Sequence record: MN988561.1
DNA: 64,000 nt
Direction: 5' to 3' (one strand)
A program made the position numbers and the translations under genes. The notes under the pieces were generated by a model. That model made no database searches. It saw only the letters and a list, made by a program, of their open reading frames with translations, and was not told where the DNA came from. Each line of letters starts with the position of its first letter. Position 1 is the stretch's first letter. Shown here in pieces: positions 3,766 to 63,949 of the stretch.

Positions 3766-3834
3766 GTCCGATAGGTTCAGTTACGCATTATAAGGGATTC
3801 TTTCTTGAAGAAGGTTCCCTCTTGGAGAAGTTAG

Positions 3835-5733
3835 ATGCTAGAATTTGCAGGTAAGTATGAAGATCTGAAGGGTATCGTACCCTCGTCTGTTCATACGATT
3901 GAGGATCTGGAGAATCAGGTCATCGCATGGGCTAAGGCCTATTACGAGAAAGAATCAGAGTTGATTTCTGATGAAGAATTCAATCTCGTTACAGAATATA
4001 TTGCAGAATTCTATCCTAATAGTCTCGTCTTGAAGACTGGATGGGGCTATAGACCTGAAGCTACCGACCATCTTCAGGAGTATCCTCACAAGATTCACGC
4101 TGGATCTCTTGCTAAGATCAAGTATGCGGACGTTAAGTCTGGTAATACGACTTATGATCCTCTATTACGATTCTCTTTGATGCCTAAGGGTGATGGAGGT
4201 AGTGTCGTTGCATACTACCACGAAGGCCTCCTGGAAAGAGCTTTGTCTCGAGGAGATGGAAATGTAGGTCTCGACATCACGAAGAATCTGGTAGCATCTG
4301 GATCTCTTCCTACCAAGATCGAGAACAAGAATATCGAATGGGTACGAGCAGAGTTGATGCTTACCTGGACTGACTATGAAGCTATCGGAGGTAAGCATCC
4401 TCGTAACAAGGCAGTAGGACTTAGTCAGTCTGAGAATGCTGATCCTGAAGAACTAGCATGCTTGAAGTTCGTAGCTTATCAGTCTAATCTAGACTTCGAC
4501 TTCGGTATGGAATTGACTCTTCTCAGGAATCTTGGATTCACAACTGTCAATCATGTCGAGATGAACTGGTCTGAATTCCTTCAGAAGATTGACGATCAAG
4601 TATTCCTAAAGTTATTGAATGAAGATTATCCAACGGATGGTCTTGTCCTTCGATTCAGTGACGATGCTGCAATCGCATTCAAGTTTCCTGATGAACGAGT
4701 TAAGACTAAGATCAAAGACATTGAATGGAATCTGTCGAGAACTGGTCGTATGGTTCCTAAGGCAATCCTGGAACCTGTCAATCTAGCAGGAGCTACGATT
4801 TCCAGAGCGACCTTGAACAACTATGAGTACTTGACTGAACTAGGATGCGGTCCAGGATCTGAAGTTGAGATCATTCGATCTAATCTGATTATCCCTAAGA
4901 TTGTGAAGGTTCTGAATAAGGAACCTGCGAGACGACCACTTGTATGCAATAGATGCTATGAGGTATTGGAGGTCGTAAAGACTGATTTGATGTGCGTCAA
5001 TGAAATGTGCGCATGTCGAGTTATGTCGTCAGTCAATCGTCTCTTTTCATTGACGAAACCTGACGGTATCGGTGGTAGTGCTTGTACGACTCTCGTTAAT
5101 GGTCTTGCAATCGATAGTTGGGAGACTGCTAAGTCAAGACTCATAGATCAAGACGTAACTGGTTTGGATAAGATCTTCGGTACAAAGACTGAGACTAAGA
5201 TTCAGGAAATGATCTCGAAGATCAAGAGTCTGAATCAGATAATCACTGTCAAAGGTGCACTTTATCTCGCGAATATTCCTAAGCTTGGTAATTCGAGTAC
5301 AGGACCTATCGCTGAGAATGTCTCAGTGGATGAATTCTTGACTGCTATTCGTGAAGATGAGATTCCTGTTTCATGGAAGCAGTACTGTGCATCTGAACCT
5401 GCATTCAACAATCTTCGTAAGTCGATTCAACGAATTCGACTGATATTAGACTTCCTTAATTGGAAGGTCAATGCTGTAGTGAAAGTTGAGAAAGTAGAAA
5501 CTCGTCTGAAGTACTGCATGACAGGAACATTTAGTAAGAAGAGATCTGAGCTACAAACTGAGTTCTCTAAGTTAGGTCTTGAATTCGTCGATGTCAAGAA
5601 AGCTCAAGTCTTGATGTGGGATGGAGAAGATCAGAAGAATAAGTATCATACTGCCAAGAAGCTCGGGATTGAGATTATCTCCGAGAAGGAATTCAGAAGT
5701 CGATATGTCCAATCAGAAGAAGCCATCGTATAA
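3835..5733 (+). CDS. ligA: NAD-dependent DNA ligase
   Basis: YY..ISDEEF domain Ia, KGDG motif I, PTDGLV, AIAFKF, SRTG OB fold, Cys4 zinc finger, C-terminal BRCT-like segment. Confidence 0.92.
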   Translation: MLEFAGKYEDLKGIVPSSVHTIEDLENQVIAWAKAYYEKESELISDEEFNLVTEYIAEFYPNSLVLKTGWGYRPEATDHLQEYPHKIHAGSLAKIKYADVKSGNTTYDPLLRFSLMPKGDGGSVVAYYHEGLLERALSRGDGNVGLDITKNLVASGSLPTKIENKNIEWVRAELMLTWTDYEAIGGKHPRNKAVGLSQSENADPEELACLKFVAYQSNLDFDFGMELTLLRNLGFTTVNHVEMNWSEFLQKIDDQVFLKLLNEDYPTDGLVLRFSDDAAIAFKFPDERVKTKIKDIEWNLSRTGRMVPKAILEPVNLAGATISRATLNNYEYLTELGCGPGSEVEIIRSNLIIPKIVKVLNKEPARRPLVCNRCYEVLEVVKTDLMCVNEMCACRVMSSVNRLFSLTKPDGIGGSACTTLVNGLAIDSWETAKSRLIDQDVTGLDKIFGTKTETKIQEMISKIKSLNQIITVKGALYLANIPKLGNSSTGPIAENVSVDEFLTAIREDEIPVSWKQYCASEPAFNNLRKSIQRIRLILDFLNWKVNAVVKVEKVETRLKYCMTGTFSKKRSELQTEFSKLGLEFVDVKKAQVLMWDGEDQKNKYHTAKKLGIEIISEKEFRSRYVQSEEAIV

Positions 5734-8147: not shown

Positions 8148-9860
8148 ATGGCATCTCGTAGAATTTACAGTCAGCAAGAAATTGATAAGATTACTCCAAT
8201 GGTCTGGAGGGAGATTGATAAACAATTTCCTTTCGATAGTGCTCGTTCAGGTCAGAAAGATCTGATTTTCAGAATTGTTAAAGCTTATATGGAAGGCAAG
8301 AAGTACTTCATTCTTGAAGCTCCTACTGGTACAGGTAAGTCAGTTATTGGTACAACTGCTGCAAAAGTGATTTCAGCACTATTCACTCTAGAAGCAGAAG
8401 ACGATAAGAAGGCTCCTCCTAGCAATAGTTGTGTATGTACTAAGACGAAAGCACTTCAGAAACAGTACTCTGACTCCTTTCCAGATATCGTTACACTCTG
8501 GTCAAAGACAGGATATCCTTGTAACCTAGAACCGTACAATCCGGATGCTTATTACGGATCGTATACATGTTCCAAGAAGTACTGCAAGCTATTCAATGAA
8601 TGTAATTTCAGAGTAGCTCGTGAGAAGTTTAACAGTGCTAGTACTGGTACACTCAACTATGCGTACTACTTGAATTTTCGTCATTATCGATCAAAAGTAC
8701 TAGTGCTTGACGAATGCCATACACTAGAGCAAGTTCTATGCAATCACCTGAGTGTTAAGTTCAATGTAGAATTCACTCATCGTACTCTACAAGTTATGCT
8801 TAAGTACGATTTGATATCCTCTGAACTAGCTTCTAAACTTTATGCACTGCTGACTAATGCGATTTCTATCAAGGATACAATGCCGAGATGGTTTCTTGTT
8901 ATGAAGTCGATCATTCAAGCTATGAAGCCTATTGTATCCCTGATGGTATCGAATTTTAATAGTCTTCAGGATGAAATTGATATGGGTAACTATACAATTG
9001 ATCCTACGGCTAAGAAGAATCTGTACCATCATGCTGGTTTAGTGAATACTCTAGAAGGTAAGTTACAGAAGCTACTTCATTCTTCTGTTGAATGGGTTAT
9101 TTCTGAACGTAAGGACAATGACTTCATTGAATTGAAGCCTGTGGAATTGCATGAAGAGGCACATATTCTATTCAATAGATGTGAGTTCGCAATCTTAATG
9201 TCTGCTACGATCTGTGGTATTCAAGTCTTCGCAGAGAATCTTGGCATCAAGTTACATGAGTATTCATCAACTCAGTTGAATTCTACTGTACCTATTGAGA
9301 ATCGTCGAGTATATTCTGTTGGACTACCTTCATTCTCTCGTGAAACTAAAGAAGAAGTATTTCCACTTTATGTCCATGTTATGGACGAGTTGATTAGTCA
9401 ATTTGCACCTAATGATCGAGGAATCATTCATAGTGTATCTTACGATAATGCGAGATTTATCGTTGATAATTCTAAGCATTCTCACCGTATGAAGATTCCT
9501 GAATCTTACGAATTGATGCATATCAAAGACTATATGTCAATGGAAGATGATCGTATTATCGTGACTCCTGCAGCAATCGAAGGTCTTGATCTTGAAGGTG
9601 ATCTATCCAGATTTCAAGCATTCTTGAAAGTACCTTATCCATATCTTGGAGACAAGTGGGTAGCTCGTAAGAAAGAAATCAGTAATGATTGGTACCTGCG
9701 AGAGACTATCTCAGCTATCGTACAAGGTGCTGGACGAAGCGTTCGTGGTGGTGATGATTATGCTACCACTTTTATTATGGATAGTAATTTTGATCGCTTA
9801 ACTTATCGAGGAGATTTGATTCCTCAATGGTTCAGTGAAGCTATTGTTAAATTAGGTTAA
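8148..9860 (+). CDS. DinG/Rad3-family SF2 helicase
   Basis: EAPTGTGKS, DECH, Cys cluster (Fe-S), MSAT, EGLDL, QGAGRSVR. Confidence 0.88.
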   Translation: MASRRIYSQQEIDKITPMVWREIDKQFPFDSARSGQKDLIFRIVKAYMEGKKYFILEAPTGTGKSVIGTTAAKVISALFTLEAEDDKKAPPSNSCVCTKTKALQKQYSDSFPDIVTLWSKTGYPCNLEPYNPDAYYGSYTCSKKYCKLFNECNFRVAREKFNSASTGTLNYAYYLNFRHYRSKVLVLDECHTLEQVLCNHLSVKFNVEFTHRTLQVMLKYDLISSELASKLYALLTNAISIKDTMPRWFLVMKSIIQAMKPIVSLMVSNFNSLQDEIDMGNYTIDPTAKKNLYHHAGLVNTLEGKLQKLLHSSVEWVISERKDNDFIELKPVELHEEAHILFNRCEFAILMSATICGIQVFAENLGIKLHEYSSTQLNSTVPIENRRVYSVGLPSFSRETKEEVFPLYVHVMDELISQFAPNDRGIIHSVSYDNARFIVDNSKHSHRMKIPESYELMHIKDYMSMEDDRIIVTPAAIEGLDLEGDLSRFQAFLKVPYPYLGDKWVARKKEISNDWYLRETISAIVQGAGRSVRGGDDYATTFIMDSNFDRLTYRGDLIPQWFSEAIVKLG

Positions 9861-9862
9861 TT

Positions 9863-10171
9863 ATGAGCAAATATCGTACAGTACATACTCTCAAAACGCT
9901 TGCACCATTCTACTATGCTGTAATGGGTGGTGAGAAGACATTTGAGATTCGTAAGAATGACCGACAATTTCAGAAGGGTGATCTTCTAGTCCTTGATCTT
10001 TACGAACCAGATGCTCAAACAAAGAATAGTGTGATTAGACCAGTATCTATTTACTGTGAAGTAACTTGGGTACTCGCTGGAGGTCAATTTGGTATTGAGC
10101 CAGGATATGCAGGACTAGCTATTCGTAATCTTGTTTTGCAGGAATTCAACGAATTAAGAGGTCCTTTCTGA
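9863..10171 (+). CDS. ASCH/DUF3850 domain protein
   Basis: HTLKT...FY.AV..GEKTFEIRKNDRQFQKGDLL. Confidence 0.85.
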   Translation: MSKYRTVHTLKTLAPFYYAVMGGEKTFEIRKNDRQFQKGDLLVLDLYEPDAQTKNSVIRPVSIYCEVTWVLAGGQFGIEPGYAGLAIRNLVLQEFNELRGPF

Positions 10172-10178
10172 TATTATT

Positions 10179-10207
10179 CAGCGAATCTGACGTCTAAAAG
10201 CCTTCCT
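10179..10207 (+). promoter_or_regulatory. Conserved bipartite motif copy 1 (candidate phage promoter)
   Basis: CAGCGAA-N10-AAAAGCCTTCCT in the intergenic gap before the HD-PolA operon. Confidence 0.6.
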
Positions 10208-10239
10208 TTCTACGACCCCTTAGATGAGATCGATACTTT

Positions 10240-10899
10240 ATGAAAGACATTGTCTTTAATCCTCTCCTTAAGATCTCTAGTGTGAACCGGTATTCCGGAG
10301 TTTATCTGACCAAGAATGAGTCAGTTTCAGATCACACTACTCAAACTGGATTACTATGTATTCTAGTTGGCAACGAGATCAATAAACGTCTTGCGAAATT
10401 GAAATCCTCTGTTAGAGTGAATCTCGAGAAATTAGCCTACAAGGCTTTAATCCACGATCTCGAGGAATCCAAGACTTGTGACACTCCTAGAAATGTTAAA
10501 TACTTCAATGACTTGATTTATCAAGAATTTGAGAGAAAGGGTGATGAACTATCTGAACTCTATGAATTTCCTGAGCTCTATGAGCAATGGAAAAATGCTA
10601 AGGATAAGACTCTAGAAGGGTATATTCTTAAAATCTGCGATATGATTCATGTCGTACGTAAACTAGTTGATGAAGTTGTACTTCTTGGAAATCTTAACAT
10701 GCTTCAGGTAGCACTGGAGTTGAAGGATCATCTGAAGAAGACTCACGATTATATTAATAAGATTACAGATCTACCTGCTGAAGCGATTGACGTCTTTAAT
10801 GAATTGACGATTTTCTCATTGGATACCGTTAACTATATTCTTAAGAAACATCAATCGGAGATTACAGATTATAACTTTACATCTCTGAAGAGCGCATAA
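10240..10899 (+). CDS. YfbR-like HD-domain 5'-deoxynucleotidase
   Basis: NRYSG, ESVSDHT, LIHDLEE..CD.P..VKYFN, KICD. Confidence 0.85.
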   Translation: MKDIVFNPLLKISSVNRYSGVYLTKNESVSDHTTQTGLLCILVGNEINKRLAKLKSSVRVNLEKLAYKALIHDLEESKTCDTPRNVKYFNDLIYQEFERKGDELSELYEFPELYEQWKNAKDKTLEGYILKICDMIHVVRKLVDEVVLLGNLNMLQVALELKDHLKKTHDYINKITDLPAEAIDVFNELTIFSLDTVNYILKKHQSEITDYNFTSLKSA

Positions 10900-13800
10900 T
10901 GTCCTTAGAAATTGAATCCATTATTAACAAAGTTGATCTGACTAGTGATGTTCGTGTATGTCACATGTGCCCACTAGCTGAGAAGTTTGGTGGATGTGAT
11001 AATCTTGGACGAGTATCTTTTGAGATTGTAGGTCAGAATCCTAAGGTTCTACTTGTAGGTGAAGCACCTGCAGCTGAGGATCTGAAATCTGAACGACCAT
11101 TCAGTAGTCAGTCTGGTTCATTCTTGAGAATGGCGATGGCTGAAATTGGCATTAATGATTACGCTCTAGCGAATGTGATCATGTGTCAACCTAAGAGTGT
11201 AAATATCTACACTCCGACTCCTGAAGAGTCCGCTCACTGTAAAGCACATATTCAAAGATTTGTTGAAAAGTACAAACCTGAGACAGTCATCTTGCTCGGA
11301 CGAGGAGCATATGAAGTCATTCTACCAGAGAGTTACTTCGCAGGTCAGTCAGTTACGAATGTAACCAAGAAGAAGGCTATCGAAATTGATGGTGTACGTT
11401 ATGGAGCAGCATTTCATCCATCGTATATCTTCCGTAATGGTGGTAAAGAATCACCACAGTACATCGACTTCTTGAATCGATTGAGACGACTGACTCAGAA
11501 TAGTGTTGATGCAGAATTCATCGTACCGTTTAAGATCGTTAATCTCGATCAACTAGATGAGACTCTCGAAGAGTTTGATGTCTACAAAGAACTAGGCTTC
11601 GACTATGAAGGTACCTCGCTTGATCCGTATGACGTCAATTATCAGGTTCTCGGACTTGGTATGTCATCGATGGACAAGGCAGTTTATATCGACTTTCATC
11701 GAGAGCCTACTCAAGAAGAAAAGAATAAGATATCTGACTTCATTCGTAAGAAGCAGATGTGGGTTTATAACGTCAACTATGAAACCAAAGTTACATGGTC
11801 TAAGTTGAGTAATGATCTTATTCGATTCCACGATGCGATGACTCTTGTAAAGATCGACTGTTCTCCTGGATCACTGAAGGACAATGCTCGTAAATATCTG
11901 AATGCAGAAATCTGGGAAGAGATCGTAGGTAACTTGACTACCTTGTTCTACGATATCTTCCAATTTATGAAGAAGATTGAGGAGAAATCTCCTAAACTAT
12001 ATAATGCTTGTAGACAAGCTAATATGGAGGCGATCTATCTTCTTAAGGAAGATACTGCTGAGAAAATCACTGGTGGTAAGAAGAATCCTAAGGTTACGAG
12101 ATATCGTACCAAGCAGGCAGATCATGCAGACTACATATCTGCTAAGATCTCTGCACTTAGAGAATTCTGCTCTGATGAAGATATCCAACGTGGATTTACT
12201 AAGTTTCCTTACGAGTGGGCAGCTGTTCCTCCGAAGATTCTAGGTGAATACTGCTGCTACGACTCTTATTACACACTAGGTCTTAAGAATCATCTGTGGG
12301 ATAAGTATAAGAGCGTTTACCAGTATTATATCACCCAAGGGTGGCTAGGCTCTACGATGGAGAGCTATGGTCTGAATTGGGATGATGATAAAGCTTCTGA
12401 GCATGAACGATTCTATCTCGTTGAAGCTACGACATGCTTGAATCAGATCATTCAGAAATTGGATTTTGGTGAGAAAACTCTTGATATTCATACAAGAGCA
12501 AGCATGATTTTCAATGACTCTAGTCTTCCTGATGCTAGGAAACTCATTGATCTGAAAGGTATCTTTAATCCAGGTACTCCAGATAAACTTAAACAGAAAC
12601 CCTTCTGGGATAAGTACGTAACTGACTTTACGACTGCAATATCCATCTATCTTGTTCTCAGTGAACAGATTCTAATGTCTCCAATCATTCCTGACCAAGC
12701 GATTGAGTTAGTCGATCGTCAAGATCTCAATAAAGCTATTGAGAATTTGATGTCAGTAGATTGGACTAAGTACGATGGAGTTGATCTTAAGACTGCCAAG
12801 TCAATTCAGAAATTGATGATGGATCTTATTGGTACACTCGATGAGAAGATCGGATGGAAGCTATATGCATTCAGAAGTGATGTTCTAGAGTGGCAATATA
12901 AAGCTCACGAAACGTACGGTGGACTAGATATCGACAATCGTGAGACTTGGACTCCTGAGTTCGAGTTGTTATATCTTCTGAGAAGATATAAAAAGGTTGA
13001 GAAGAGTAAGAATACGTACATCAATGGTAAGGTAGGTAGAGCACGAGTATGGTTGTCGACAGTCGATGATTACCAGAAGCCTCCTGTTCGACTGAAGCGT
13101 TACTTTGATGTTATGGAAGAGAGACAGTGGAAGAAGTATGAACTTCAGCATAACGAGAGATGGATTCTTGATACAGAATTCAATGTTGCTGGTGCAAATA
13201 CTAAACGATGGAAAGCAGCTATTCATACTGTTCCATGGGGATCAGAACTCCGAGAGATCTATGCATCTCGTTGGTGGGATGGTCTGTTTATGCATTACGA
13301 CTACTCTCAGGCAGAAGTTCGAATTCTAGCAGCTATCTCTCAGGATAGAGCACTACTGGAAGCATTCGCTGATCCTGATACTGACATTCACATGTTCGTT
13401 GCATCTCGAATCTGGAAGAAAGATCCTAAGGATGTGACTCCAGCTGAGCGTCGATATGCTAAGGTCTGCTCGTTCTCGATTTTGTACGGTAAGTCTATCG
13501 AAGGATTTGCTACTGAACATACCAAGGGTGATGTTGCAGCAGCTAAGCGTATCTTTGATGACTTCTATGCAGCATTCCCTCAAGTTAAGGAGTGGATTGA
13601 GAAACAGCATAGAGATGCGAAAGTATCTGGTAAGGTCTTTACCTTATTCGGAGATCCTCTGTATCTTGATATGTCGGACCCTAATGGTGCTATGCGTGAT
13701 GCTCAAAACTGGCCAATTCAGTCCTCGAGCAGCTGTGTAGCAGGATGGGCTATCTGGATGAACTACGAGTTTTCTAGAAATAGAAACATTCCGATTCTTC

Positions 13801-14228
13801 CAATGGTCTTTACTCACGACTCTCACGATATGGAATTCAGATGTCAACATCTATTCGAGACGATTGATACTGTTCTCGAAACTGCAGTTGATCTACCTAA
13901 GCGTAGATTTAATCTTCCGATGAAGATCGACTGGGAAATCGGTGTTAATCAGTCTGATGCAATTGAGTTCAAAGAAACATCTCGATTTGATGAAGGTCGA
14001 GGTCGTACGTATCACTTTGAATGCAATGAAAATGCAATGATGCCTGTATTCGATCGTCTAAAGAACTACTTTGACATCGAATATGAAGTCACTTCTAGAG
14101 AGACTGAGAGAGCATCGCTGAAAGAAATGTTCGTTGCAAGACGAGCATTCTCTAAGTATCTTGGTACAGATGTAACCGTCGTAGGTGGTAACCTCAAACT
14201 AGTGAAGAAAAATGGGATAAAAATATGA
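10899..14228 (+). CDS. polA: Family A DNA polymerase with N-terminal family-4 uracil-DNA glycosylase-like domain
   Basis: CHMCPL, GEAP, HPS UDG motifs; FDYE, YNVNYE, YCCYDS exonuclease motifs; DYSQAEVR, RRYAKVCSFSILYG, THDS polymerase motifs A/B/C. Confidence 0.93.
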   Translation: MSLEIESIINKVDLTSDVRVCHMCPLAEKFGGCDNLGRVSFEIVGQNPKVLLVGEAPAAEDLKSERPFSSQSGSFLRMAMAEIGINDYALANVIMCQPKSVNIYTPTPEESAHCKAHIQRFVEKYKPETVILLGRGAYEVILPESYFAGQSVTNVTKKKAIEIDGVRYGAAFHPSYIFRNGGKESPQYIDFLNRLRRLTQNSVDAEFIVPFKIVNLDQLDETLEEFDVYKELGFDYEGTSLDPYDVNYQVLGLGMSSMDKAVYIDFHREPTQEEKNKISDFIRKKQMWVYNVNYETKVTWSKLSNDLIRFHDAMTLVKIDCSPGSLKDNARKYLNAEIWEEIVGNLTTLFYDIFQFMKKIEEKSPKLYNACRQANMEAIYLLKEDTAEKITGGKKNPKVTRYRTKQADHADYISAKISALREFCSDEDIQRGFTKFPYEWAAVPPKILGEYCCYDSYYTLGLKNHLWDKYKSVYQYYITQGWLGSTMESYGLNWDDDKASEHERFYLVEATTCLNQIIQKLDFGEKTLDIHTRASMIFNDSSLPDARKLIDLKGIFNPGTPDKLKQKPFWDKYVTDFTTAISIYLVLSEQILMSPIIPDQAIELVDRQDLNKAIENLMSVDWTKYDGVDLKTAKSIQKLMMDLIGTLDEKIGWKLYAFRSDVLEWQYKAHETYGGLDIDNRETWTPEFELLYLLRRYKKVEKSKNTYINGKVGRARVWLSTVDDYQKPPVRLKRYFDVMEERQWKKYELQHNERWILDTEFNVAGANTKRWKAAIHTVPWGSELREIYASRWWDGLFMHYDYSQAEVRILAAISQDRALLEAFADPDTDIHMFVASRIWKKDPKDVTPAERRYAKVCSFSILYGKSIEGFATEHTKGDVAAAKRIFDDFYAAFPQVKEWIEKQHRDAKVSGKVFTLFGDPLYLDMSDPNGAMRDAQNWPIQSSSSCVAGWAIWMNYEFSRNRNIPILPMVFTHDSHDMEFRCQHLFETIDTVLETAVDLPKRRFNLPMKIDWEIGVNQSDAIEFKETSRFDEGRGRTYHFECNENAMMPVFDRLKNYFDIEYEVTSRETERASLKEMFVARRAFSKYLGTDVTVVGGNLKLVKKNGIKI

Positions 14229-14956
14229 GTCGAGCAAAATCACTGATCGACATGATTAAAGGAACCAAGAACGAGTCTGGTGACGATGACGACGAAATCT
14301 CAAATCGTCGTCGTGGTGGTACTTGGATTGATCCTCATCATGTTGACGCAGCATCCAAGAATCTGAAGCGTACTCAGTCATTCTACAAGAAGGCTAGTAA
14401 TGCTAGCTCAGTTGAAGATCAAGAGTATTGGTTAGCTCGAGTCTTTAACAAGAATGCTGTTGCTAAGAGAATCTCCTCTGGATTCTATAACAAGGAAGCT
14501 AAGGCAGGAGTCGTAGGCGTCGATGACGTTGAAGATCTGTCAGCATCTCTTGTTACAGGTAATCCAAGAGCATCGGGTCGTGTTACGACTAAGGATCACA
14601 CACGTAATCCTGAAGAGATCTTTGCTGCTAACCAGATCGTTAAAGCTCTCTACGATACGATTGACAAGAAGTGGCCTGGACGTCCTCAGAACAAGATGGT
14701 TCTGACATACTTCCTCAAGGTCAATAAAGCTGATCATCTTATTAACTTTAAGCTTCCATACGATGATCGTGTGGAAGAAATCATCTCTTCTATTGAGAAA
14801 TATGCTAAAGACAATAACTCCAAGATTACTTGGACTACTCCTAAGCAGTTTCAGAATTTTTCAGGTATTGAAGACAGAATGTATGCAAAGGTCATGCAGT
14901 TCCTAGCAGATAATGCTGTAGAATTGGGTGCTCTTATCATTCGAGGTAAGAAATAA
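14225..14956 (+). CDS. Hypothetical protein, weakly sigma-factor-like, with MSRA N-terminal motif
   Basis: DDVEDL and NPEEIF..QIVKALYDTIDK...KMVL resemble ECF sigma region 2 and the entry to region 4; paralogous to 15399-16055. Confidence 0.45.
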   Translation: MSRAKSLIDMIKGTKNESGDDDDEISNRRRGGTWIDPHHVDAASKNLKRTQSFYKKASNASSVEDQEYWLARVFNKNAVAKRISSGFYNKEAKAGVVGVDDVEDLSASLVTGNPRASGRVTTKDHTRNPEEIFAANQIVKALYDTIDKKWPGRPQNKMVLTYFLKVNKADHLINFKLPYDDRVEEIISSIEKYAKDNNSKITWTTPKQFQNFSGIEDRMYAKVMQFLADNAVELGALIIRGKK

Positions 14957-15303
14957 TGGACCAGAGAGTACTTGACGTTCTAGCTCAAGGATATATTAAT
15001 CGTGAGCTTACACTACCAGCCGCTGATCTATCTAAGGCTGTTATTTATATTGTTAATTATCATGTTAGACATAAGACAAGTGGACTGGCAGATCTAAAGA
15101 CTGCTTATGGTAGTCCTGAGTCTTCTAATCTGGCAGTTAGGTTCTACTCTACAGGTCTATTTAATGGTGTTGTAGATAATGATTCTAAGAGCTCAGATCT
15201 ATTCTGGTCTCTATTCAATTCGATGACTACATCTCTGATGATTGAGTCCATCAATGAATCGTTAGCTGAATCCTCGAAAGAAGTTGAAGTGATCGCCGAA
15301 TAA
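14956..15303 (+). CDS. Hypothetical protein
   Basis: 115-aa ORF translationally coupled (TAATG) to the upstream gene. Confidence 0.7.
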   Translation: MDQRVLDVLAQGYINRELTLPAADLSKAVIYIVNYHVRHKTSGLADLKTAYGSPESSNLAVRFYSTGLFNGVVDNDSKSSDLFWSLFNSMTTSLMIESINESLAESSKEVEVIAE

Positions 15304-15398
15304 AGGCGCTTACTTGTTGGGTAAATGGGTGCAGTTAGGCTCTTGGAGGGATTCTTATTCGGTGAGCCCTCCAAGGCTTCCAGAAAGAGGGTAATGTA

Positions 15399-16055
15399 AT
15401 GGCTAGCGATAGACAGATGAAAGGTTACATCTGGGGAGAGCAAATCCTGGATCATGCTCACATTGAGCATTATGCAAGGGCGATGAGATCCGATGATGTA
15501 CGTACCGAGGAGTACTGGTACCAGGCAGTATTTCATGGGAAGAACCACTCTAAGGTTCTTCAGTCGGAAGTCTTTCATAAGAAAATCCGCAACAACGTTA
15601 CAAATAAAGTAGAAGTTGAGACTCTGGTTTCTACTTCTAACTCTGACGTCGTTAATGATGTTCTAGCAGAGGAGAGAAAGAATGAAGTAAAATATTCTCG
15701 AGTTATCGAGGATGATAAGGTCGGTAATATGTCCGACTATCTTCCCGATGCAACTGTTGGGTTCTCAGTTATTATCAGAGAAATAGCTGACAAATGCAAC
15801 GATGATGAAATCAAGGTCCTGAGCTACTTTGTATGTCAGGAACATCTGGATAATATCCTATTCGAGGGGAATTCGATTCATTCATCAAACGATCGCTTCA
15901 ATCGTACGATCCTAGGTATCTGGGAAAAGAATGTGAAGAGCATCAATGATCTGAATCGATTTGTAGGTACTCGTGCTCGTGCTGATAAAGCTAGGTGGAG
16001 ACTCTGCAATCTCTTGAAGAAGGAGTATCCTGAACTCTTGTCAGGAAAACGATGA
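15399..16055 (+). CDS. Hypothetical protein, paralog of 14225-14956, candidate sigma-like factor
   Basis: EEYWYQAVF vs QEYWLARVF; IKVLSYF vs KMVLTYF; similar C-terminal helix-turn-helix-like spacing. Confidence 0.45.
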   Translation: MASDRQMKGYIWGEQILDHAHIEHYARAMRSDDVRTEEYWYQAVFHGKNHSKVLQSEVFHKKIRNNVTNKVEVETLVSTSNSDVVNDVLAEERKNEVKYSRVIEDDKVGNMSDYLPDATVGFSVIIREIADKCNDDEIKVLSYFVCQEHLDNILFEGNSIHSSNDRFNRTILGIWEKNVKSINDLNRFVGTRARADKARWRLCNLLKKEYPELLSGKR

Positions 16056-16291
16056 GTCCATCTAACAAGCCCTATGACCCAAAGTTAGACACAATCATCT
16101 ACGAAAATAGACATCCTGAAACGGGTTTGTGCATCTCGGTGCATAAATACGGAAGCAGTGAACCGAAGATCAAGTTAGGTCCAAGAATCGTCGGTGACGA
16201 CTCCAAACCTGTCTACTTGAAATTAGGTAGAATATCTATAAACGAGTTTTTGTGGATATCCGAGGTCCTAAAACCCTACGTTAAATCTTAG
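16052..16291 (+). CDS. Small protein, possibly PC4/YdbC-like ssDNA-binding fold
   Basis: CISVHKY..SEPKIKL...KLGRISINEF pattern. Confidence 0.4.
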   Translation: MSPSNKPYDPKLDTIIYENRHPETGLCISVHKYGSSEPKIKLGPRIVGDDSKPVYLKLGRISINEFLWISEVLKPYVKS

Positions 16292-16303
16292 AGGATCTAA
16301 AAC

Positions 16304-19300
16304 ATGCAACTTTCTCTGAAGCCAGTCTCTCCAGAATCTGTACTCTTGACTTCACAAGGAGAGGTCAAGTCGTATGAGACTCTGAACTTCAAGACAGGTC
16401 TACCTGTTCGAGACGGTCTCTTGTGCCAGAAGGTATTCGGACCGATTAGAGACTACGTATGTGAATGCGGCAAGTACGATGGTAAGAAATACCAGGGACA
16501 TACTTGTGAGAAGTGCGGTGTTACGGTAGCGAGTTCACGTGCTCGTACTGTGAGAATGGGTCATATTGATCTTCAAGTTCCCATTCTTAATCCGTTGATG
16601 ATCGAGTCGATCGAATCGATTATAGGTCTCCCATCCAGAAAGATGGAGGACTTTATGAAGAACAAGATCTGCCTGAAATTTTCAGCATCTGGTACAGGTA
16701 ATCTTGTTCGTAAGGACGGTACACGAGGTATCGCGTATTTTGTAGATCCTAAGGAATCTGATCCTCGATCTCCTACTCTGCAGCATACGAAGTCGTCTCT
16801 GGTTCTTTATGAACTCTTGACGGATCTCGATATTGAAGAGACGCTCAAAGTCAATGGATCCAAGATCCTGAAGACCTATGTGCAGAAGAACTTCCCTCTT
16901 TCTAATCTCTTCATTCGTTATCTACCGGTATCTCCAGCAGGATACCGTCCAGTCACTCGTATGAGAAACTACTATTCTCAGCATCCCAAGAATGACCTTT
17001 ATCAGAAGATCATTCGACGTACTCTGCGAGTGAAGGAACTGGTTAATATCAATGCAGACTCAATGATTCTTCAGGAAGAGGCAGGCATTCTGTATAAGTC
17101 TGTCGATCAACTCTTCACTGGAGGAGCTCGAGATGGCGATGGGAACCCTCTTCCTGGAACCATTGAGAAGATGATGGGTAAGAGAGGTATTCTCCGAGGA
17201 AATCTTCTCGGTAAGCGTACCGACTACTCTGGACGTTCAGTTATCACTTCAGCAGGTGATCGTGTAGAAGTGGACCAGATTGGTCTACCTCGTAAGATGG
17301 CATACATCTTGTTTCGTCCTTTCATTCTCCGTTATCTGATGACGGAGTATCTGGATCATTATACTGAAGCACTGAAGCACTACGAGAAGAAGACTGTTAT
17401 CGCACTGAAGTCTCTCGAGATGGTAGCTAAGGATTATCCGATCATCATGAATCGTGCTCCTACGCTTCATAGATACGGTGTAATGTCTTTCCGTACCAAG
17501 TTGGTAAATGGTAAGGCTATCCTCGTTCATCCGATTGTATGTTCTCCATTCAATGCAGACTTCGACGGAGATACTGTAGCTATCCACTTGCCTCTTTCAG
17601 CTAAGTCTGTTCAGGAGTGCAAAGATTATCTCATGCCTCAGAACAATCTCCTGTCTTCACTTGATGGTGATCCGATCATCAATATGTCGCACGAGATGGT
17701 TATCGGTCTTGCTATCATGTCTCGTATTAAGGATCATGATAAGGGATTCGGTACATTCCGACGTATGGATGAGCTCGAGTATCTTCATACTGTCACCAAT
17801 CCTCAGACTAGCCGTCCTACACTTGAGATCTACGATAGAATCAAGTGGAAAGATGAACGAGGAGTGACAGAGACGTGCTATGGTCGACTTCTTCTCGAGC
17901 AGACATTCAAGACCAAGAATCTTCCGAAGGACTTCTCTAAGAAGACTATTCGTCGGATGATCAGTGATGCGTACGACAAGCTTGGACCTGATGAACTGAT
18001 TAAGGTACTGGATGTAGCTACTCAGCTTTCATTCAAGTATGCTACGAACTCTGGTTTCTCAGTTTCGATTGATGATTGTAAGGTACCTTCTACGAAACCT
18101 GCTAAGATTGCGAAAGCTAGAGAGCAGGAAGCTGAGAATTATCGTCAATTCGATAACAATGAAATCAATCTTGCAGAGCGTCGAGAGAACAATATTCGTC
18201 TCTGGAACGATGTCTTTGAAGATCTTCATCACGATTGGATGAAAGAAGCAGGTGAGGACAATCCGGTAGTTCTTATGTATACTACTGGTGCTCGTGTTAG
18301 TAAGTCTCAGGTCAATCAGATCGGAGTCGCTAAGGGTCTTGTATCCAATGCACTCAATCAGATCATCGAGAAGCCTATGGTTAACTCCTTCCGTGAAGGA
18401 TTGTCGACGTTTGAGTACTTTGCATCTTGCTCTGGATCTCGTAAGTCCATGGCAGACAAGAAGAATCTGACTCCCAAGTCTGGTTATCTTACACGTCGAA
18501 TGATTACTGCTAGCCGAGATTTCTTCATTAATTCAGATGATTGTGGTACCGATAAGGGTATCATGCGTACGATGAAGTCCTCGTATGGACGTTATCGTTG
18601 CGACAATGGTGAGATGATTGGTACGAACAATAGTGAAGAACTCGTTAAGGTTCGTAGTCCGATTCATTGTGAGTCGCATGGTGGTATCTGCGTTAAGTGC
18701 TACGGTATTGATCCTGCTAAGCGTAAGATCGTCACGAAGGGGTCCAACGTAGGAGCTATTGCAGCTCACTCGTTGACTGAATCTACAACTCAGATGACGA
18801 TGCGTACCTTCCATACATCTGGTGCAGTCGTTCTGAAGGATAGTCCGATGGTCATTACTGCCCAGAAGGATGGTAAGATCAGCTGGGATACTCTTCATCC
18901 TGTCTACAGCAAGATTCATGTTGTTGCAGATATGGAAGATTGGGATACACCTCTCAATGATCGATTGACGTATACAGTTCATAACAAGATGTCTCGCATT
19001 CTTGTTAAGGATGGTCAGTCTGTCAAGAAGGGTGATCCTCTAGCGATCTACGTTGATGAAGATCTTGAGAGCGACGACGTCAGTGGATCGCTCCCTAAGA
19101 TTGAATCTCTGTATGAAGGTCGAGTACCTCCGAAAGCGTACAAGTCAGTTATCTCGAAGGTAGCTGGTAAGATTGGTATTAACATCGGAGATGAAGGTCT
19201 TAAGATCTTCGTTGATGGTGAATACCAAGGTACTGCTCATCCTAAGACTCCGGTATTCGTTGCTCAAGGTCAGTATGTTGAAGCTGGTCAGACTCTCTCG

Positions 19301-19687
19301 TTTGGTTCTCCAGACGTAGTAGGTTTGTTCAAGGAGACAAAGGATCTTGATCTCGCTTACAAGGTCTTTGAGAAGACTCTGATGGATATCTACAATAAGG
19401 AAGGTCTCCAGCCAGTACCAACTCATTCGGAGATGATCTTCAGAGCGATGTCTAATCTGGTATACACCGAGAGTGGTCCTTATGGTCTTCGATCCCATGG
19501 AGACAAGGGTAGCATTATGCTGAAGGGTATTACTCAGATTGGTGCGAATCATCCGTCCTGGTTGAAGTCAATCGGATTCGGATGGGTAGCTCAGACGATC
19601 AGAACTTCTGCTGTGAATCTTGCTACCACGTACGATCTTCCTACCGAACGTCTGATGTCTGGTGAATTGATTTACGAGGATAAATAA
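16304..19687 (+). CDS. rpoC: Phage-encoded multisubunit RNA polymerase beta-prime subunit
   Basis: CECGKY/CEKC zinc finger, NLLGKRTDYSGRSVI, NRAPTLHR, catalytic NADFDGD, bridge helix SGYLTRR, trigger loop TQMTMRTFH. Confidence 0.95.
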   Translation: MQLSLKPVSPESVLLTSQGEVKSYETLNFKTGLPVRDGLLCQKVFGPIRDYVCECGKYDGKKYQGHTCEKCGVTVASSRARTVRMGHIDLQVPILNPLMIESIESIIGLPSRKMEDFMKNKICLKFSASGTGNLVRKDGTRGIAYFVDPKESDPRSPTLQHTKSSLVLYELLTDLDIEETLKVNGSKILKTYVQKNFPLSNLFIRYLPVSPAGYRPVTRMRNYYSQHPKNDLYQKIIRRTLRVKELVNINADSMILQEEAGILYKSVDQLFTGGARDGDGNPLPGTIEKMMGKRGILRGNLLGKRTDYSGRSVITSAGDRVEVDQIGLPRKMAYILFRPFILRYLMTEYLDHYTEALKHYEKKTVIALKSLEMVAKDYPIIMNRAPTLHRYGVMSFRTKLVNGKAILVHPIVCSPFNADFDGDTVAIHLPLSAKSVQECKDYLMPQNNLLSSLDGDPIINMSHEMVIGLAIMSRIKDHDKGFGTFRRMDELEYLHTVTNPQTSRPTLEIYDRIKWKDERGVTETCYGRLLLEQTFKTKNLPKDFSKKTIRRMISDAYDKLGPDELIKVLDVATQLSFKYATNSGFSVSIDDCKVPSTKPAKIAKAREQEAENYRQFDNNEINLAERRENNIRLWNDVFEDLHHDWMKEAGEDNPVVLMYTTGARVSKSQVNQIGVAKGLVSNALNQIIEKPMVNSFREGLSTFEYFASCSGSRKSMADKKNLTPKSGYLTRRMITASRDFFINSDDCGTDKGIMRTMKSSYGRYRCDNGEMIGTNNSEELVKVRSPIHCESHGGICVKCYGIDPAKRKIVTKGSNVGAIAAHSLTESTTQMTMRTFHTSGAVVLKDSPMVITAQKDGKISWDTLHPVYSKIHVVADMEDWDTPLNDRLTYTVHNKMSRILVKDGQSVKKGDPLAIYVDEDLESDDVSGSLPKIESLYEGRVPPKAYKSVISKVAGKIGINIGDEGLKIFVDGEYQGTAHPKTPVFVAQGQYVEAGQTLSFGSPDVVGLFKETKDLDLAYKVFEKTLMDIYNKEGLQPVPTHSEMIFRAMSNLVYTESGPYGLRSHGDKGSIMLKGITQIGANHPSWLKSIGFGWVAQTIRTSAVNLATTYDLPTERLMSGELIYEDK

Positions 19688-19690
19688 AGG

Positions 19691-20650: not shown

Positions 20651-20656
20651 TGTGTC

Positions 20657-21706: not shown

Positions 21707-21774
21707 AATGTACATCCATTTTAGTTTATTTAATGAGGATTATCACTTTACACAATTATAAAGTGTGCACAAAG

Positions 21775-21803
21775 AGGAAGGCTTATGTCGCCTTCCTTCG
21801 CTG
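21775..21803 (-). promoter_or_regulatory. Conserved bipartite motif copy 2, overlapping a terminator-like hairpin
   Basis: CAGCGAA-N10-ATAAGCCTTCCT on the - strand upstream of the three MSR-motif genes; AGGAAGGC/GCCTTCCT also pair. Confidence 0.6.
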
Positions 21804-21818
21804 AATCCTTAGCTTTAT

Positions 21819-63640: not shown

Positions 63641-63733
63641 GGAGGACCGACTTACATTATCAATTATTGGATAATTGTATAATAACTCACGACAAAATAA
63701 AACGCTCTTTCTTTCTTGATTCACGGTTACCTA

Positions 63734-63762
63734 CAGCGAATTGAGCTCTCAAAAGCCTTCCT
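63734..63762 (+). promoter_or_regulatory. Conserved bipartite motif copy 3
   Basis: CAGCGAA-N10-AAAAGCCTTCCT pointing out of the window. Confidence 0.6.
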
Positions 63763-63949
63763 CTACGTAATGCCAGGACCCTCCTTATTATCACATGACA
63801 TTCCACACGAGATTGCATTCGCATTATTCTTATTATAAGAATTGTAATAGACTTTATTACTTATCTCGATTTATCCTACCTTATGGAATTTCATTTTCTC
63901 CTTATTAAAATAAAAATTTTACGAATTTTCACGATCTGACTTTCTTAAT

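What the first reader, a model, noticed from the sequence alone, without database searches (positions are those of the whole stretch)
10179..10207. Recurrent bipartite motif CAGCGAA-N10-A(A/T)AAGCCTTCCT at three operon heads
Seen: exact spacing in three intergenic copies. These are at 10179-10207 (+, before HD/PolA), 21775-21803 (-, before the three MSR-motif genes) and 63734-63762 (+, pointing out of the window). Eighteen positions are identical and two copies extend to ATTCAGCGAA. It does not resemble sigma70, sigma54 or T4 late promoters. Inference: a promoter for the phage RNA polymerase with one of the sigma-like paralogs, or an operator.
Basis: partly seen in the sequence, partly recalled or inferred. 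Interest (0 to 1): 0.72.

Follow-up and report, generated by a model that had tools for sequence, protein, structure and literature searches.

The report
Phage middle-gene promoter motif family
The three-copy motif is part of a family of about 35 identically oriented signals placed just upstream of genes all over this Rhizobium phage genome, most likely a phage-specific promoter class read by an RNA polymerase that the phage remodels with its own beta-prime subunit and a sigma-like protein.

Summary
The window is the last 64 kb of Rhizobium phage RHph_TM61 (Kleczkowskaviridae, Cuauhnahuacvirus). A matrix built from the motif finds about 35 copies in the 203-kb genome. All are co-oriented with the local genes and 30 lie at gene junctions. 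The core typically ends 27-34 nt before the next start codon, and 10 and 18 nt before two tRNA genes.

The motif is bipartite, AGCGAA-N13-AGCCTTCCT-N2-TT, and has no obligatory hairpin. In sister phage Y65 the two boxes are conserved while the spacers mutate. In copy 1, 8 of 13 spacer bases changed without any change in length.

A second, related motif (class B, 19 copies) precedes the early small-ORF region, the ligase gene and the beta-prime operon.

The phage encodes a bacterial-type beta-prime but no detectable beta. Next to it are two paralogous ~220-aa orphan proteins. The modelled C-terminal domain of one resembles sigma region 4.

The distant Vibrio phage Va2 shares the beta-prime, the factor family and a core motif of the same shape (AACCTTGCT-N3-TG), also upstream of its genes.

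Best reading: a middle-class promoter for a phage-modified polymerase. This is inferred; no start sites have been mapped. An RNA-level element or an activator box remain possible.

The parts
10174..10214 (+). Class A motif copy 1 (finding 10179-10207). Box 1 ATTCAGCGAA, 13-nt spacer, core AGCCTTCCTTTCT. It heads the operon HD 5'-deoxynucleotidase, UDG-PolA, 243-aa factor paralog and 115-aa ORF. The core ends 33 nt before the ATG at 10240.
   Evidence: (40.8 bits). In Y65, 8 of 13 spacer bases differ while both boxes and the spacing are unchanged.
21768..21808 (-). Class A motif copy 2 (finding 21775-21803). It is the only copy in the minus-strand structural block, upstream of three small genes: the prohead-core/scaffold-like gene 21407-21706, then 20923-21378 and 20657-20911.
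   Evidence: 43.4 bits; PHROG head scaffolding match for 21407-21706. Identical in Y65.
63729..63769 (+). Class A motif copy 3 (finding 63734-63762), in the divergent region between the late (-) and early (+) gene blocks. The record is circular. About 260 nt of AT-rich, palindrome-rich DNA follows, then a class B motif at record 24-69 and gene 001 at record 83.
   Evidence: (31.5 bits).
5423..5463 (+). Class A motif copy 4, degenerate (CAACGAA...TTAGACTTCCT). It lies inside the 3' part of the NAD-ligase gene, upstream of the primase gene.
   Evidence: 3 mismatches; 29.9 bits. 100% conserved in Y65.
3769..3814 (+). Class B motif copy (CGATAGGTTCAGTTA...GGGATTCTTTCTTGAAG), 20 nt upstream of the ligase gene (3835).
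   Evidence: (45.1 bits; shuffle maximum 8.3).
15323..15368 (+). Class B motif copy upstream of the operon holding the 218-aa factor, a 79-aa ORF, beta-prime, a 65-aa ORF and a 237-aa ORF.
   Evidence: (51.5 bits). A similar element lies upstream of the homologous gene in metagenome contigs L034 and L035.
15399..16055 (+). 218-aa orphan protein, a candidate promoter-specificity factor. It has two helical domains; the C-terminal domain (about 110-218) resembles sigma region 4 and related helix-turn-helix domains.
   Evidence: AF2 model, pLDDT 82. The leading VIA-align matches are almost all sigma region 4 (27 of the first 29 rows), Z 4.5-6.5. A family member sits immediately upstream of beta-prime in 6 of 6 metagenome contigs and near it in Va2. 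No Pfam or PHROG hit.
14225..14956 (+). 243-aa paralog of the 218-aa protein. It is the third gene of the operon headed by motif copy 1.
   Evidence: hhalign 97.1% probability, E 6.8e-11 over 135 columns. hmmsearch E 1.1e-13. BLASTP E 6e-5.
16304..19687 (+). Phage-encoded RNA polymerase beta-prime homolog (1127 aa, Rpb1 domains 1-5). No beta homolog is detectable in the genome.
   Evidence: RpoC query E 3.4e-152; RpoB query finds nothing below E 3 by phmmer and nothing at E up to 1 by tblastn.

Best explanation
The motif is one class ('class A', about 35 copies) of phage-specific promoters in Rhizobium phage RHph_TM61, most likely the middle class. It drives replication, nucleotide-metabolism and tRNA genes and a few others.

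It is bipartite. An upstream box (ATT-C-AGCGAA) and a core (A-GCCTTCCT-N2-TT) are separated by a fixed 13-nt spacer, about 21 bp centre to centre. Transcription would start at the purine-rich positions about 5-10 nt downstream of the core, giving roughly 20-nt leaders.

Inferred mechanism: the host RNA polymerase core has its beta-prime replaced by the phage beta-prime homolog. This enzyme is directed to the motif by one of two paralogous ~220-aa phage proteins. Their sigma-4-like C-terminal helix-turn-helix would read the upstream box, as ECF-type sigma factors read a -35 element.

A sister motif (class B, 19 copies, same architecture but different specificity positions) heads the early small-ORF region, the ligase gene and the operon holding the 218-aa factor and beta-prime. 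This suggests a cascade from class B to class A.

Shown here: the family, its orientation and placement, the selection on the boxes, and the co-occurrence with the beta-prime and factor module. Inferred: that it initiates transcription, where the start site lies, and which proteins read it.
For: - Family size: the matrix scan finds 36 hits at 18 bits or more. One is a tRNA T-arm false positive, so 35 are credible. The best shuffled genome scored 17.9 bits.
- Orientation: 34 copies lie on the + strand inside the + gene block and 1 on the - strand inside the - block, so 35 of 35 are co-oriented with their genes.
- Placement: 30 of 35 lie at gene junctions in a genome that is about 90% coding.
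- Distance to the gene: the core ends 27-34 nt before the annotated start codon in 10 copies. It ends 10 nt and 18 nt before the mature 5' ends of tRNA-Ser and tRNA-Asn. The distance to the downstream gene is tighter than the distance to the upstream stop codon.
- Column profile: C8 is present in 34 of 35 copies. A25, C28, T29, T30 and C31 are present in 35 of 35. Positions 38-43 are purine-rich.
- No shared fold: RNA folds are heterogeneous, and copies 1 and 3 fold no better than shuffles (z = +0.4 and +0.3). The test of own-copy against cross-copy stems gives p about 0.05.
- Selection, TM61 against Y65: the boxes carry 6 substitutions in 700 nt, the spacers 19 in 455, and the flanks differ at 2.8%. 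In copy 1, 8 of 13 spacer bases are replaced with no indel and intact boxes.
- Sister class B has 19 copies, all on the + strand, at 33-62 bits against a shuffle maximum of 8.3. Its matrix aligns with class A (p about 0.007).
- Vibrio phage Va2 has a beta-prime 28.6% identical and the same factor family. It carries 29 coding-strand copies of GAACCTC-N4-ACCTTGCT-N3-TGA, most of them about 30-45 nt upstream of start codons. Its matrix aligns with class A (p about 0.003).
- Factor and beta-prime: the factor family is linked to beta-prime in 6 of 6 metagenome contigs and has a sigma-4-like fold. Beta-prime is present and beta is absent.
- Timing: in the distant relative YerA41, RNA-seq places RNA polymerase subunits and ligase early, and 5'-deoxynucleotidase and DNA polymerase in the middle class (PMC7354516). 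This matches the class B / class A partition in TM61.
Against: - No transcription start sites, transcriptome or biochemistry exist for this phage or its genus.
- All genes in each block are co-directional, so a transcribed RNA element would show the same orientation and placement.
- The sigma-4 resemblance is modest (Z 4.5-6.5) and is shared with LuxR-type helix-turn-helix domains. The tool itself warns that Z under 8 can reflect a common arrangement. Foldseek found nothing significant, and the N-terminal domain has no sigma-2 match.
- Three copies are followed by a strong terminator-like hairpin before the next gene: record 17088 (sequence) and record 65484 and 82253. This is odd for a simple mRNA promoter.
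- Va2 has one factor gene but at least three intergenic motif classes, so there is no simple one-factor-one-motif rule.
- That a lone beta-prime assembles with host subunits is an assumption.
Confidence: 0.6

Rival explanations
1. Activator-dependent promoter without a new sigma. One or both boxes are bound by a phage DNA-binding activator, and the 218- or 243-aa helix-turn-helix proteins would be that activator. The activator recruits RNA polymerase carrying a host sigma factor, as MotA/AsiA do at T4 middle promoters. The motif is then an activator box plus an unusual -10 region.
For: The C-terminal domain also matches LuxR/GerE-type response-regulator helix-turn-helix domains (rows 28, 34, 35). 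No sigma-2-like domain was recognised. All the placement, orientation and selection evidence fits this reading equally well.
Against: No TAnnnT or other sigma-70 -10 element lies at a fixed distance from the boxes. Sigma-70-like sites are depleted in the region: 16 found against 31.6 expected. The strict linkage of the factor gene to beta-prime suggests a polymerase-bound partner rather than a free activator.
Confidence: 0.17
2. RNA-level element. The motif is transcribed within long polycistronic RNAs and acts in the 5' untranslated region of the next gene. It could be a processing site for a phage or host endoribonuclease, a binding site for a translational regulator, or an anti-Shine-Dalgarno (CCUUCC) occluder.
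For: All copies lie in the sense orientation inside co-directional gene arrays and close to ribosome-binding sites. CCUUCC is complementary to GGAAGG-type Shine-Dalgarno sequences, and one copy (record 52492) can pair with its own ribosome-binding site (sequence). A subset of copies sits inside hairpins. The copies cluster around tRNA genes, where processing occurs.
Against: There is no conserved secondary structure. Copies 1 and 3 fold no better than shuffles, and the stems are barely above the cross-copy control. The hairpin of copy 1 is destroyed in Y65 while the boxes persist. Two boxes at a fixed distance of two helical turns, across a freely mutating spacer, is typical of duplex DNA recognition. 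Most copies have no complementary Shine-Dalgarno sequence downstream. No Rfam family matches.
Confidence: 0.15
3. Repeated recombination or mobility cassette, or a DNA-level site unrelated to expression (replication priming, packaging, modification target), whose position near genes is incidental.
For: TM61 has two copies 92 nt apart where Y65 has one, which is consistent with recombination between copies. Copy 3 lies beside an AT-rich palindromic region.
Against: The 35-of-35 co-orientation with genes includes a strand switch in the minus block. The spacing to start codons and tRNA 5' ends is tight, and the same layout is seen in Va2. None of this is expected for such sites. Recombination between repeated promoters is a known side effect, not a rival function.
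Confidence: 0.03

Closest known systems
ECF (group 4) sigma-factor promoters, e.g. sigma-E GGAACTT-N16-TCAAA or EcfG GGAAC-N16-17-CGTT (consensus recalled from memory)
   Same: Bipartite with a fixed spacer and about 21-22 bp between box centres. The best structural matches of the 218-aa protein's C-terminal domain are ECF sigma region 4 domains.
   Different: The box sequences are unrelated (AGCGAA / AGCCTTCCT). The candidate factor has no sequence similarity to the sigma-70 family (no Pfam hit) and no recognisable sigma-2 domain. The partner polymerase would carry a phage beta-prime.
Phage-encoded sigma factors and their promoters (SPO1 gp28 AGGAGA-N17-TTTNTTT; SPO1 gp33/34; T4 gp55 TATAAATA) (from memory)
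   Same: A phage-specific promoter class unlike host promoters, used to time gene expression. The SPO1 middle class also has a pyrimidine-rich downstream element.
   Different: Those factors act on unmodified host core enzyme. Here a phage beta-prime is genetically coupled to the factor, and the consensus differs.
T4 middle promoters (MotA box at -30 plus a sigma-70 -10, with AsiA) (from memory)
   Same: A middle-gene class in a T4-related myovirus with an upstream box read by a phage protein. Copies lie internal to and between early transcription units.
   Different: No sigma-70-type -10 element is present. No MotA or AsiA homolog was found among the ORFs searched, and none is annotated.
Jumbo-phage multisubunit RNA polymerases and their promoters (phiKZ, AR9; PMC7598289)
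   Same: The phage encodes beta-prime-like polymerase parts and has its own promoter motifs found upstream of operons. In AR9, promoter recognition depends on the modified base content of the phage DNA.
   Different: Those phages encode complete, split beta and beta-prime sets and do not use host core. Their promoters are short AT-rich -10-type or TSS-proximal motifs, not a 35-bp bipartite element. TM61 has one full-length, bacterial-like beta-prime and no beta.
PeSL cassettes of T4-type phages (early promoter plus stem-loop, proposed to drive modular shuffling; Arbiol et al. 2010, from memory)
   Same: A repeated promoter-like motif, often combined with a variable stem-loop, lies between small ORFs of the plastic early region. 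This is especially true of class B. There is evidence of deletion or duplication between copies.
   Different: PeSL promoters are sigma-70-type. These motifs are not.

Membership tests
Sigma-70-type promoter | TTGACA-like and TATAAT-like hexamers 16-18 bp apart | tested here: not met
   The consensus scan finds no site overlapping copies 1-3. The nearest is a 9/12 match downstream of copy 2. Sites are depleted overall: 16 against 31.6 expected.
T4-type late promoter (gp55) | TATAAATA at -10, with no -35 element | tested here: not met
   The column profile of 35 copies has no A/T-rich octamer. The core is AGCCTTCCT.
Sigma-54 promoter | GG at -24 and GC at -12, 10 bp apart (TGGCAC-N5-TTGC) | tested here: not met
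   No such dinucleotide pair is conserved in the profile.
ECF-sigma-type bipartite promoter (works-like, not membership) | Two conserved boxes with a fixed spacer of about 16-17 bp, and a spacer free to vary | tested here: met
   The spacing is invariant in all 35 gapless copies. The spacer mutates about five times faster than the boxes between TM61 and Y65, and copy 1 has 8 of 13 spacer changes with no indel.
ECF-sigma-type bipartite promoter (works-like, not membership) | Recognised by a sigma-70-family protein with sigma-2 and sigma-4 domains | tested here: inconclusive
   The candidate 218-aa protein has a C-terminal domain matching sigma-4 at Z 4.5-6.5. It has no Pfam Sigma70_r2 or r4 hit, no sigma-2 match and no significant Foldseek hit.
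Promoter (any class) | A primary transcript 5' end at a fixed short distance downstream | not testable with these tools
   No transcriptome for Cuauhnahuacvirus was found in the literature searches. There is only indirect support from the spacing to start codons and tRNA 5' ends.
Intrinsic terminator | G+C-rich hairpin followed by a T-run | tested here: not met
   No terminator-like site lies at copies 1-3. Only a minority of copies sit in or near such hairpins.
Structured cis-regulatory RNA (Rfam family or conserved fold) | Conserved secondary structure with covarying pairs, or a match to a curated family | tested here: not met
   No Rfam match at gathering threshold. The folds are heterogeneous. 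The own-against-cross stem test gives p about 0.05 for class A.
Operator of a dimeric repressor | Dyad symmetry between half-sites | tested here: not met
   The two boxes (AGCGAA and AGCCTTCCT) are neither direct nor inverted repeats of each other. The orientation is strictly directional.

The most novel reading that the evidence does not exclude
A clade of myoviruses swaps only the beta-prime subunit of the host RNA polymerase for its own. The clade includes Rhizobium Cuauhnahuacvirus, Vibrio phage Va2 and uncultured relatives, and is probably allied to the phages that carry the SP15/YerA41-type UDG-PolA and T-hypermodified DNA. The hybrid enzyme would be paired with an orphan family of ~220-aa factors ending in a sigma-4-like domain. 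It would read bipartite promoters with a T/C-rich core (RCCTTSCT), possibly in hypermodified-thymidine form. In TM61 two factor paralogs and two related promoter classes (B, then A) would form a self-contained temporal cascade that is orthogonal to host transcription.
Probability: 0.3. Interest if true: 0.85.

Novelty: new variant of a known kind. Interest (0 to 1): 0.62.

Why it matters
Phage-specific promoter classes are a known kind of element, so the motif as such is not exotic. Three things make it worth following up.

- It gives a ready genome-wide map of two probable transcription classes in a phage family (Kleczkowskaviridae) for which the only related paper found (phiM9, PMC4621102) describes no promoter motif and leaves late transcription unexplained.
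- It is tied to an unusual gene set: one bacterial-type beta-prime gene with no beta, always next to an orphan protein with a sigma-4-like domain. If these form a hybrid polymerase, this would be a way of taking over host transcription that was not found described in the papers searched.
- The same phages carry the UDG-PolA fusion linked to T-hypermodified DNA. The T-rich promoter core may therefore be read in modified form, which would connect DNA hypermodification with transcription specificity, as in AR9.

The motif and factor pairs could also serve as orthogonal expression parts for rhizobia.

Tried and rejected
- **Exact-pattern scan of IMG/VR** with AGCGAA-N13-AGCCTTCCT: 15 contigs with one match each, none with several, so chance level and uninformative.
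- **The search for related loci**: the beta-prime protein found no relatives in IMG/VR. The factor alignment was too divergent to be used.
- **Metagenome contigs of factor homologs**: all are 1-2 kb, too short to test for class A copies.
- **A common RNA or DNA hairpin enclosing the core**: attractive by eye (for example record 137543 and 82253), but not general. Class A gives p about 0.05 and class B p about 0.01, and copies 1 and 3 fold like shuffles. Rejected as a defining feature.
- **ESM Atlas look-alikes of the 243- and 218-aa proteins**: scores 0.56-0.70, poor stored models, no usable lead.
- **Foldseek against PDB and AFDB-SwissProt**: nothing with E below 2.
- **Pfam and PHROG searches of the ORFs around beta-prime**: no informative hits except beta-prime itself and a scaffold-like small gene.
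- **Pfam on ten large hypothetical proteins, searching for a beta subunit**: none found.
- **A one-paralog-one-motif rule**: contradicted by Va2, which has one factor gene and at least three motif classes.
- **A late-promoter motif for the minus-strand structural block**: none convincing by eye.
Full report
**Identity of the window.** Megablast places the window at 100% identity on Rhizobium phage RHph_TM61 (MN988561.1). The record is 202,964 bp, circular, and marked a 'partial genome' with N runs. The phage belongs to Kleczkowskaviridae, genus Cuauhnahuacvirus. Window position plus 138,964 gives the record position, and the window runs to the end of the record. I fetched the rest of the record and joined it to the window. 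Genes 1 to about 159.5 kb are all on the + strand. They comprise small early ORFs, nucleotide metabolism, replication, a tRNA cluster, PolA and beta-prime. The remaining 43 kb is the structural block on the - strand.

**The observation.** Shuffled sequence gives 0.04 matches at up to 3 mismatches. A fourth, degenerate copy lies at 5428-5456, inside the ligase gene.

**Genome-wide family.**
- A position matrix seeded on mismatch hits and iterated finds 36 sites at 18.3-44.2 bits. The best site in ten shuffled genomes scored 8.5-17.9 bits.
- One site is the T-arm of tRNA-Ser and I discard it, leaving 35.
- Thirty-four copies are on the + strand within the + block. The single - strand copy (copy 2 of the finding) is within the - block. 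Orientation therefore follows the genes in 35 of 35.
- Against the annotation and an independent ORF map, 30 copies lie in intergenic DNA or overlap only the last few codons of the upstream gene. Five are internal to genes: 008, 029, the vWA gene 244, a homing endonuclease gene, and the ligase.
- The distance from the last T of CCTTCCT to the next annotated start codon is 27-34 nt in ten copies (30 nt in five of them). It is 10 nt to the mature 5' end of tRNA-Ser and 18 nt to tRNA-Asn.
- The distance to the upstream stop codon is looser, from -8 to +41 nt relative to the motif start. The element is therefore anchored to the downstream gene.
- Only one copy lies in the 43-kb structural block. 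Copies are densest between 52 and 150 kb, upstream of thyX, the primase-helicase, a 5'-3' exonuclease, the gyrase region, several tRNAs, the dUTPase and RNR unit, and HD-PolA.

**Anatomy.** The column profile of the 35 copies reads (G)ATT-c-AGCGAA, then a 13-nt spacer with a weak central RGSGTC, then A-GCCTTCCT-t-n-TT, then a purine-rich stretch.
- The C of AGCGAA is present in 34 of 35 copies. The A, and the central C-T-T-C of the core, are present in 35 of 35.
- The box centres are about 21 bp apart, which is two helical turns.
- All copies align without gaps.

**Is it a structure?**
- By eye several copies place the core in the loop of a hairpin.
- Folding eight copies gives heterogeneous results. 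Copies 1 and 3 fold no better than shuffles (z = +0.4 and +0.3).
- I compared each copy's own 5' and 3' arms against arms swapped between copies. The excess is weak: mean score 11.3 against 10.6, permutation p about 0.05.
- No Rfam family matches at gathering threshold.
- I treat the motif as a linear, duplex-type signal, with local hairpins as an optional extra.

**Selection.** RHph_Y65 is the most divergent member of the genus (96.9% identity over 4 kb). I fetched 167 kb of it and aligned every copy with 120-nt flanks.
- The 20 conserved columns carry 6 substitutions in 700 nt (0.9%).
- The 13 spacer columns carry 19 in 455 nt (4.2%).
- The flanks differ at 2.8%.
- Copy 1 is a natural experiment. 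TCTGACGTCTAAA has become ATTCGGCTCTGAG, with 8 of 13 positions changed. There is no indel, ATTCAGCGAA and AGCCTTCCTTTCTACG are unchanged, and the weak hairpin of the TM61 copy is lost.
- Where TM61 has two copies 92 nt apart (record 129877 and 129969), Y65 has one. This suggests recombination between copies.

**A sister motif.** Listing all + strand gaps of at least 45 nt revealed a second element, class B: (G)ATAGGT(T/G)CA(C/G)TTA-GGTC-N-(A/G)GGATTCTTCTTTGAAGGG.
- It has 19 copies at 33-62 bits, against a shuffle maximum of 8.3, all on the + strand.
- Sixteen lie in the first 62 kb, between small early ORFs, including one 14 nt upstream of gene 001.
- The other three lie upstream of gene 250, of the ligase (window 3769-3814) and of the 218-aa ORF that opens the beta-prime operon (window 15323-15368).
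- Class B is also conserved against Y65: 8 substitutions in 870 nt, against 2.5% in the flanks.
- The class A and B matrices align in register better than column-shuffled controls (p about 0.007). They share GAT, TTA-GGTC, TTC-T and TT-G at the same offsets and differ in the two boxes.
- Class B has somewhat more hairpin signal than class A (p about 0.01).

**The polymerase genes.**
- The ORF at 16304-19687 has Rpb1 domains 1-5 (E 1e-30 to 1e-5). It is 33% identical to enterobacterial RpoC.
- A bacterial RpoB query, run with phmmer at maximum sensitivity against all ORFs of at least 50 aa and with tblastn against the genome, finds nothing below E = 3 in TM61 and nothing below E = 0.29 in Va2.
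- Ten large hypothetical proteins have no Rpb2 domain.
- The phage therefore encodes beta-prime alone.
- Within the phage collection this protein is at least 99.7% identical only inside the genus. The next relatives are 24-31% identical: Vibrio phages Va2, 1.031.O and 150E35-1, E. coli phages IME392 and EP_H11, then YerA41, Carin-5 and RP13.
- In IME392 the neighbourhood is the same: helicase, PolA, then beta-prime, then polX and ligase.

**The 'sigma-like paralogs'.**
- The 218-aa ORF (15399-16055) and the 243-aa ORF (14225-14956) are paralogs. Evidence: BLASTP E 6e-5, hhalign 97.1% probability with E 6.8e-11 over 135 columns, and hmmsearch E 1.1e-13. The 237-aa ORF downstream of beta-prime is unrelated.
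- An exhaustive profile search finds 43 representative relatives of about 210-230 aa. None has a relevant Pfam domain.
- In six metagenome contigs a family member is followed immediately by a beta-prime homolog 41-73% identical to TM61's. In one of them (L034) the order 243-aa paralog, 115-aa ORF, family member, beta-prime is kept.
- Va2 has one member, also just upstream of its beta-prime.
- An AlphaFold model built on 34 sequences has mean pLDDT 82 and two helical domains.
- Foldseek finds nothing significant.
- The Foldseek-independent search of 48,161 chains returns sigma region 4 domains in 27 of the first 29 rows for residues about 110-218. Examples are ECF SigL, SigH, SigB, CnrH, RpoE, E. 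coli sigma-E region 4 on -35 DNA, T. aquaticus SigA, SigW and SigK. Z is 4.5-6.5 with 55-83 aligned residues.
- The Z values are modest, and LuxR-type helix-turn-helix domains also appear. The safe statement is a sigma-4/LuxR-like helix-turn-helix on a protein that is genetically locked to beta-prime.

**Co-occurrence in a distant phage.** I joined the Va2 genome (128,360 bp, all genes on the + strand) from four pieces.
- It shares with TM61 the structural module, helicases, ligase, an MreB-like ATPase, beta-prime (28.6%) and the factor.
- ACCTTGC occurs 32 times on the + strand. Twenty-nine of these carry the extended context GAACCTC-N4-(A)ACCTTGCT-N3-TG(A/T)A, and most lie about 30-45 nt upstream of start codons. 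The 12 - strand occurrences have no such context.
- The Va2 matrix aligns with class A better than every column-shuffled control (p about 0.003). Compare ATA-GCCTTCCT-tct-TGT with TAA-ACCTTGCT-ctg-TGA.
- Va2 also has a class-B-like element, with one copy in front of its beta-prime, and a third class in front of structural genes.
- The motif type thus travels with the beta-prime and factor module across phages that share no DNA similarity.

**Timing by analogy.** YerA41 is a distant relative in the same hit list. Its RNA-seq time course puts RNA polymerase subunits and DNA ligase in the early class, and 5'-deoxynucleotidase and DNA polymerase in the middle class (PMC7354516, Table 3). In TM61 the ligase and the beta-prime operon have class B motifs, and the 5'-deoxynucleotidase-PolA operon has class A copy 1. 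This fits class B as early and class A as middle, and it fits beta-prime and the 218-aa factor being made before class A is used. The 243-aa paralog lies in a class A operon and could serve a later step. That is speculation.

**Mechanism proposed.**
- Class A is a bipartite promoter.
- The sigma-4-like domain of a phage factor reads AGCGAA.
- The core AGCCTTCCT-N2-TT plays the part of a -10 and discriminator region.
- Initiation occurs in the purine-rich positions about 5-10 nt downstream. This matches the 10-nt gap to tRNA-Ser and leaders of about 20 nt.
- The enzyme would be host beta, alpha and omega with the phage beta-prime.
- Shown: the family, its geometry, the selection and the co-occurrence. 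Inferred: initiation, the start position, the reader proteins and the hybrid enzyme.

**What does not fit.**
- Three copies are followed by a strong terminator-like hairpin before the next gene: record 17088 (sequence) and record 65484 and 82253. They may make short RNAs, act as attenuators, or be overlapping terminator-promoter units.
- Copy 3 points into about 260 nt of AT-rich, palindromic DNA with no ORF, ahead of the class B motif of gene 001.
- How class B would be read at the very start of infection is unknown. A virion-borne factor, as in YerA41, is one possibility.

**Literature.** The phiM9 paper notes an RpoE-like sigma and the absence of gp33 in phiM9 and P10VF, and describes no promoter motif (PMC4621102). 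No paper in the library deals with Cuauhnahuacvirus transcription. The jumbo-phage polymerase review covers only complete split beta and beta-prime sets (PMC7598289).

**Verdict.** It is a genome-wide, oriented cis-element under selection. The most likely reading is a phage middle promoter class (confidence about 0.6 for the full statement, higher for 'promoter of some kind'). The polymerase and factor attribution is plausible and testable but unproven.

Noticed in passing
window 3769-3814 and 15323-15368 (+); 17 more copies at record 24-107904: A second strongly conserved intergenic motif ('class B'): GATAGGT(T/G)CA(C/G)TTA..GGTC..GGGATTCTTCTTTGAAGGG. It has 19 copies, all on the + strand. 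It precedes early small ORFs, the ligase and the beta-prime operon, and its core often lies inside a variable hairpin.
   Followed up: yes
window 16304-19687 (+): A full-length bacterial-type RNA polymerase beta-prime homolog with no beta homolog anywhere in the genome. The same is true of Vibrio phage Va2. This suggests a hybrid enzyme with host subunits.
   Followed up: partly
window 10240-14228 (+): The PolA carries an N-terminal uracil-DNA-glycosylase domain and is preceded by an HD 5'-deoxynucleotidase. This is the arrangement of the SP15/YerA41/Carin-5 polymerase family, which is linked to T-hypermodified phage DNA (PMC13697223). The record's 13 N runs and 'partial genome' status may reflect DNA that is hard to sequence.
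   Followed up: partly
window 539-653, 718-792, 1009-1073 (+), upstream of TROVE gene 1470-3038: Sub-threshold Rfam YrlA (Y RNA-like) matches (36-37 bits, E about 1e-6) and a tRNA-like element that ARAGORN does not call lie upstream of a Ro60/TROVE gene. This looks like a phage-borne Ro60 and Y RNA module, flanked by tRNA-Leu genes.
   Followed up: partly
window 63950-64000 (+) and the start of the record: An extremely AT-rich stretch of overlapping palindromes (TATTATAATAATTATA / TATAATTATTATAATA) lies at the junction of the divergent late and early gene blocks. It is a candidate origin or regulatory region, and motif copy 3 points into it.
   Followed up: no
record 129877 and 129969 (outside the window; L005 36977 and 37069): TM61 has two class A copies 92 nt apart where Y65 has a single hybrid copy. 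This is consistent with deletion or duplication by recombination between motif copies.
   Followed up: partly
record 17088, 65484, 82253 (outside the window): These class A copies are followed within about 30-60 nt by strong terminator-like hairpins with T-runs, before the next gene. They are possible short non-coding transcripts, attenuators, or overlapping terminator-promoter units.
   Followed up: no
L022 (E. coli phage IME392), intergenic regions near PolA, beta-prime and ligase: A different recurrent intergenic motif, AAAGGCTGTTAA(A/T)nTGG (3 copies in 21 kb), occurs in another lone-beta-prime phage. Its beta-prime gene is split into three pieces by inserted ORFs.
   Followed up: no
L021, L023-L025 (Vibrio phage Va2): Besides the class-A-like ACCTTGCT motif, Va2 has two more classes. 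One is AGTAGTA..hairpin..TATAATTATTA, in front of the terminase, portal and other structural genes. The other is class-B-like: CCTnAGAAGGGTT-N5-AAnCCCTTAGTnnTGtAAGGG, including a copy upstream of its beta-prime.
   Followed up: partly
window 9500-22500: Sigma-70-type consensus sites are about half as frequent as in shuffled sequence (16 against 31.6, sd 5.9). This suggests avoidance of host-type promoters.
   Followed up: no
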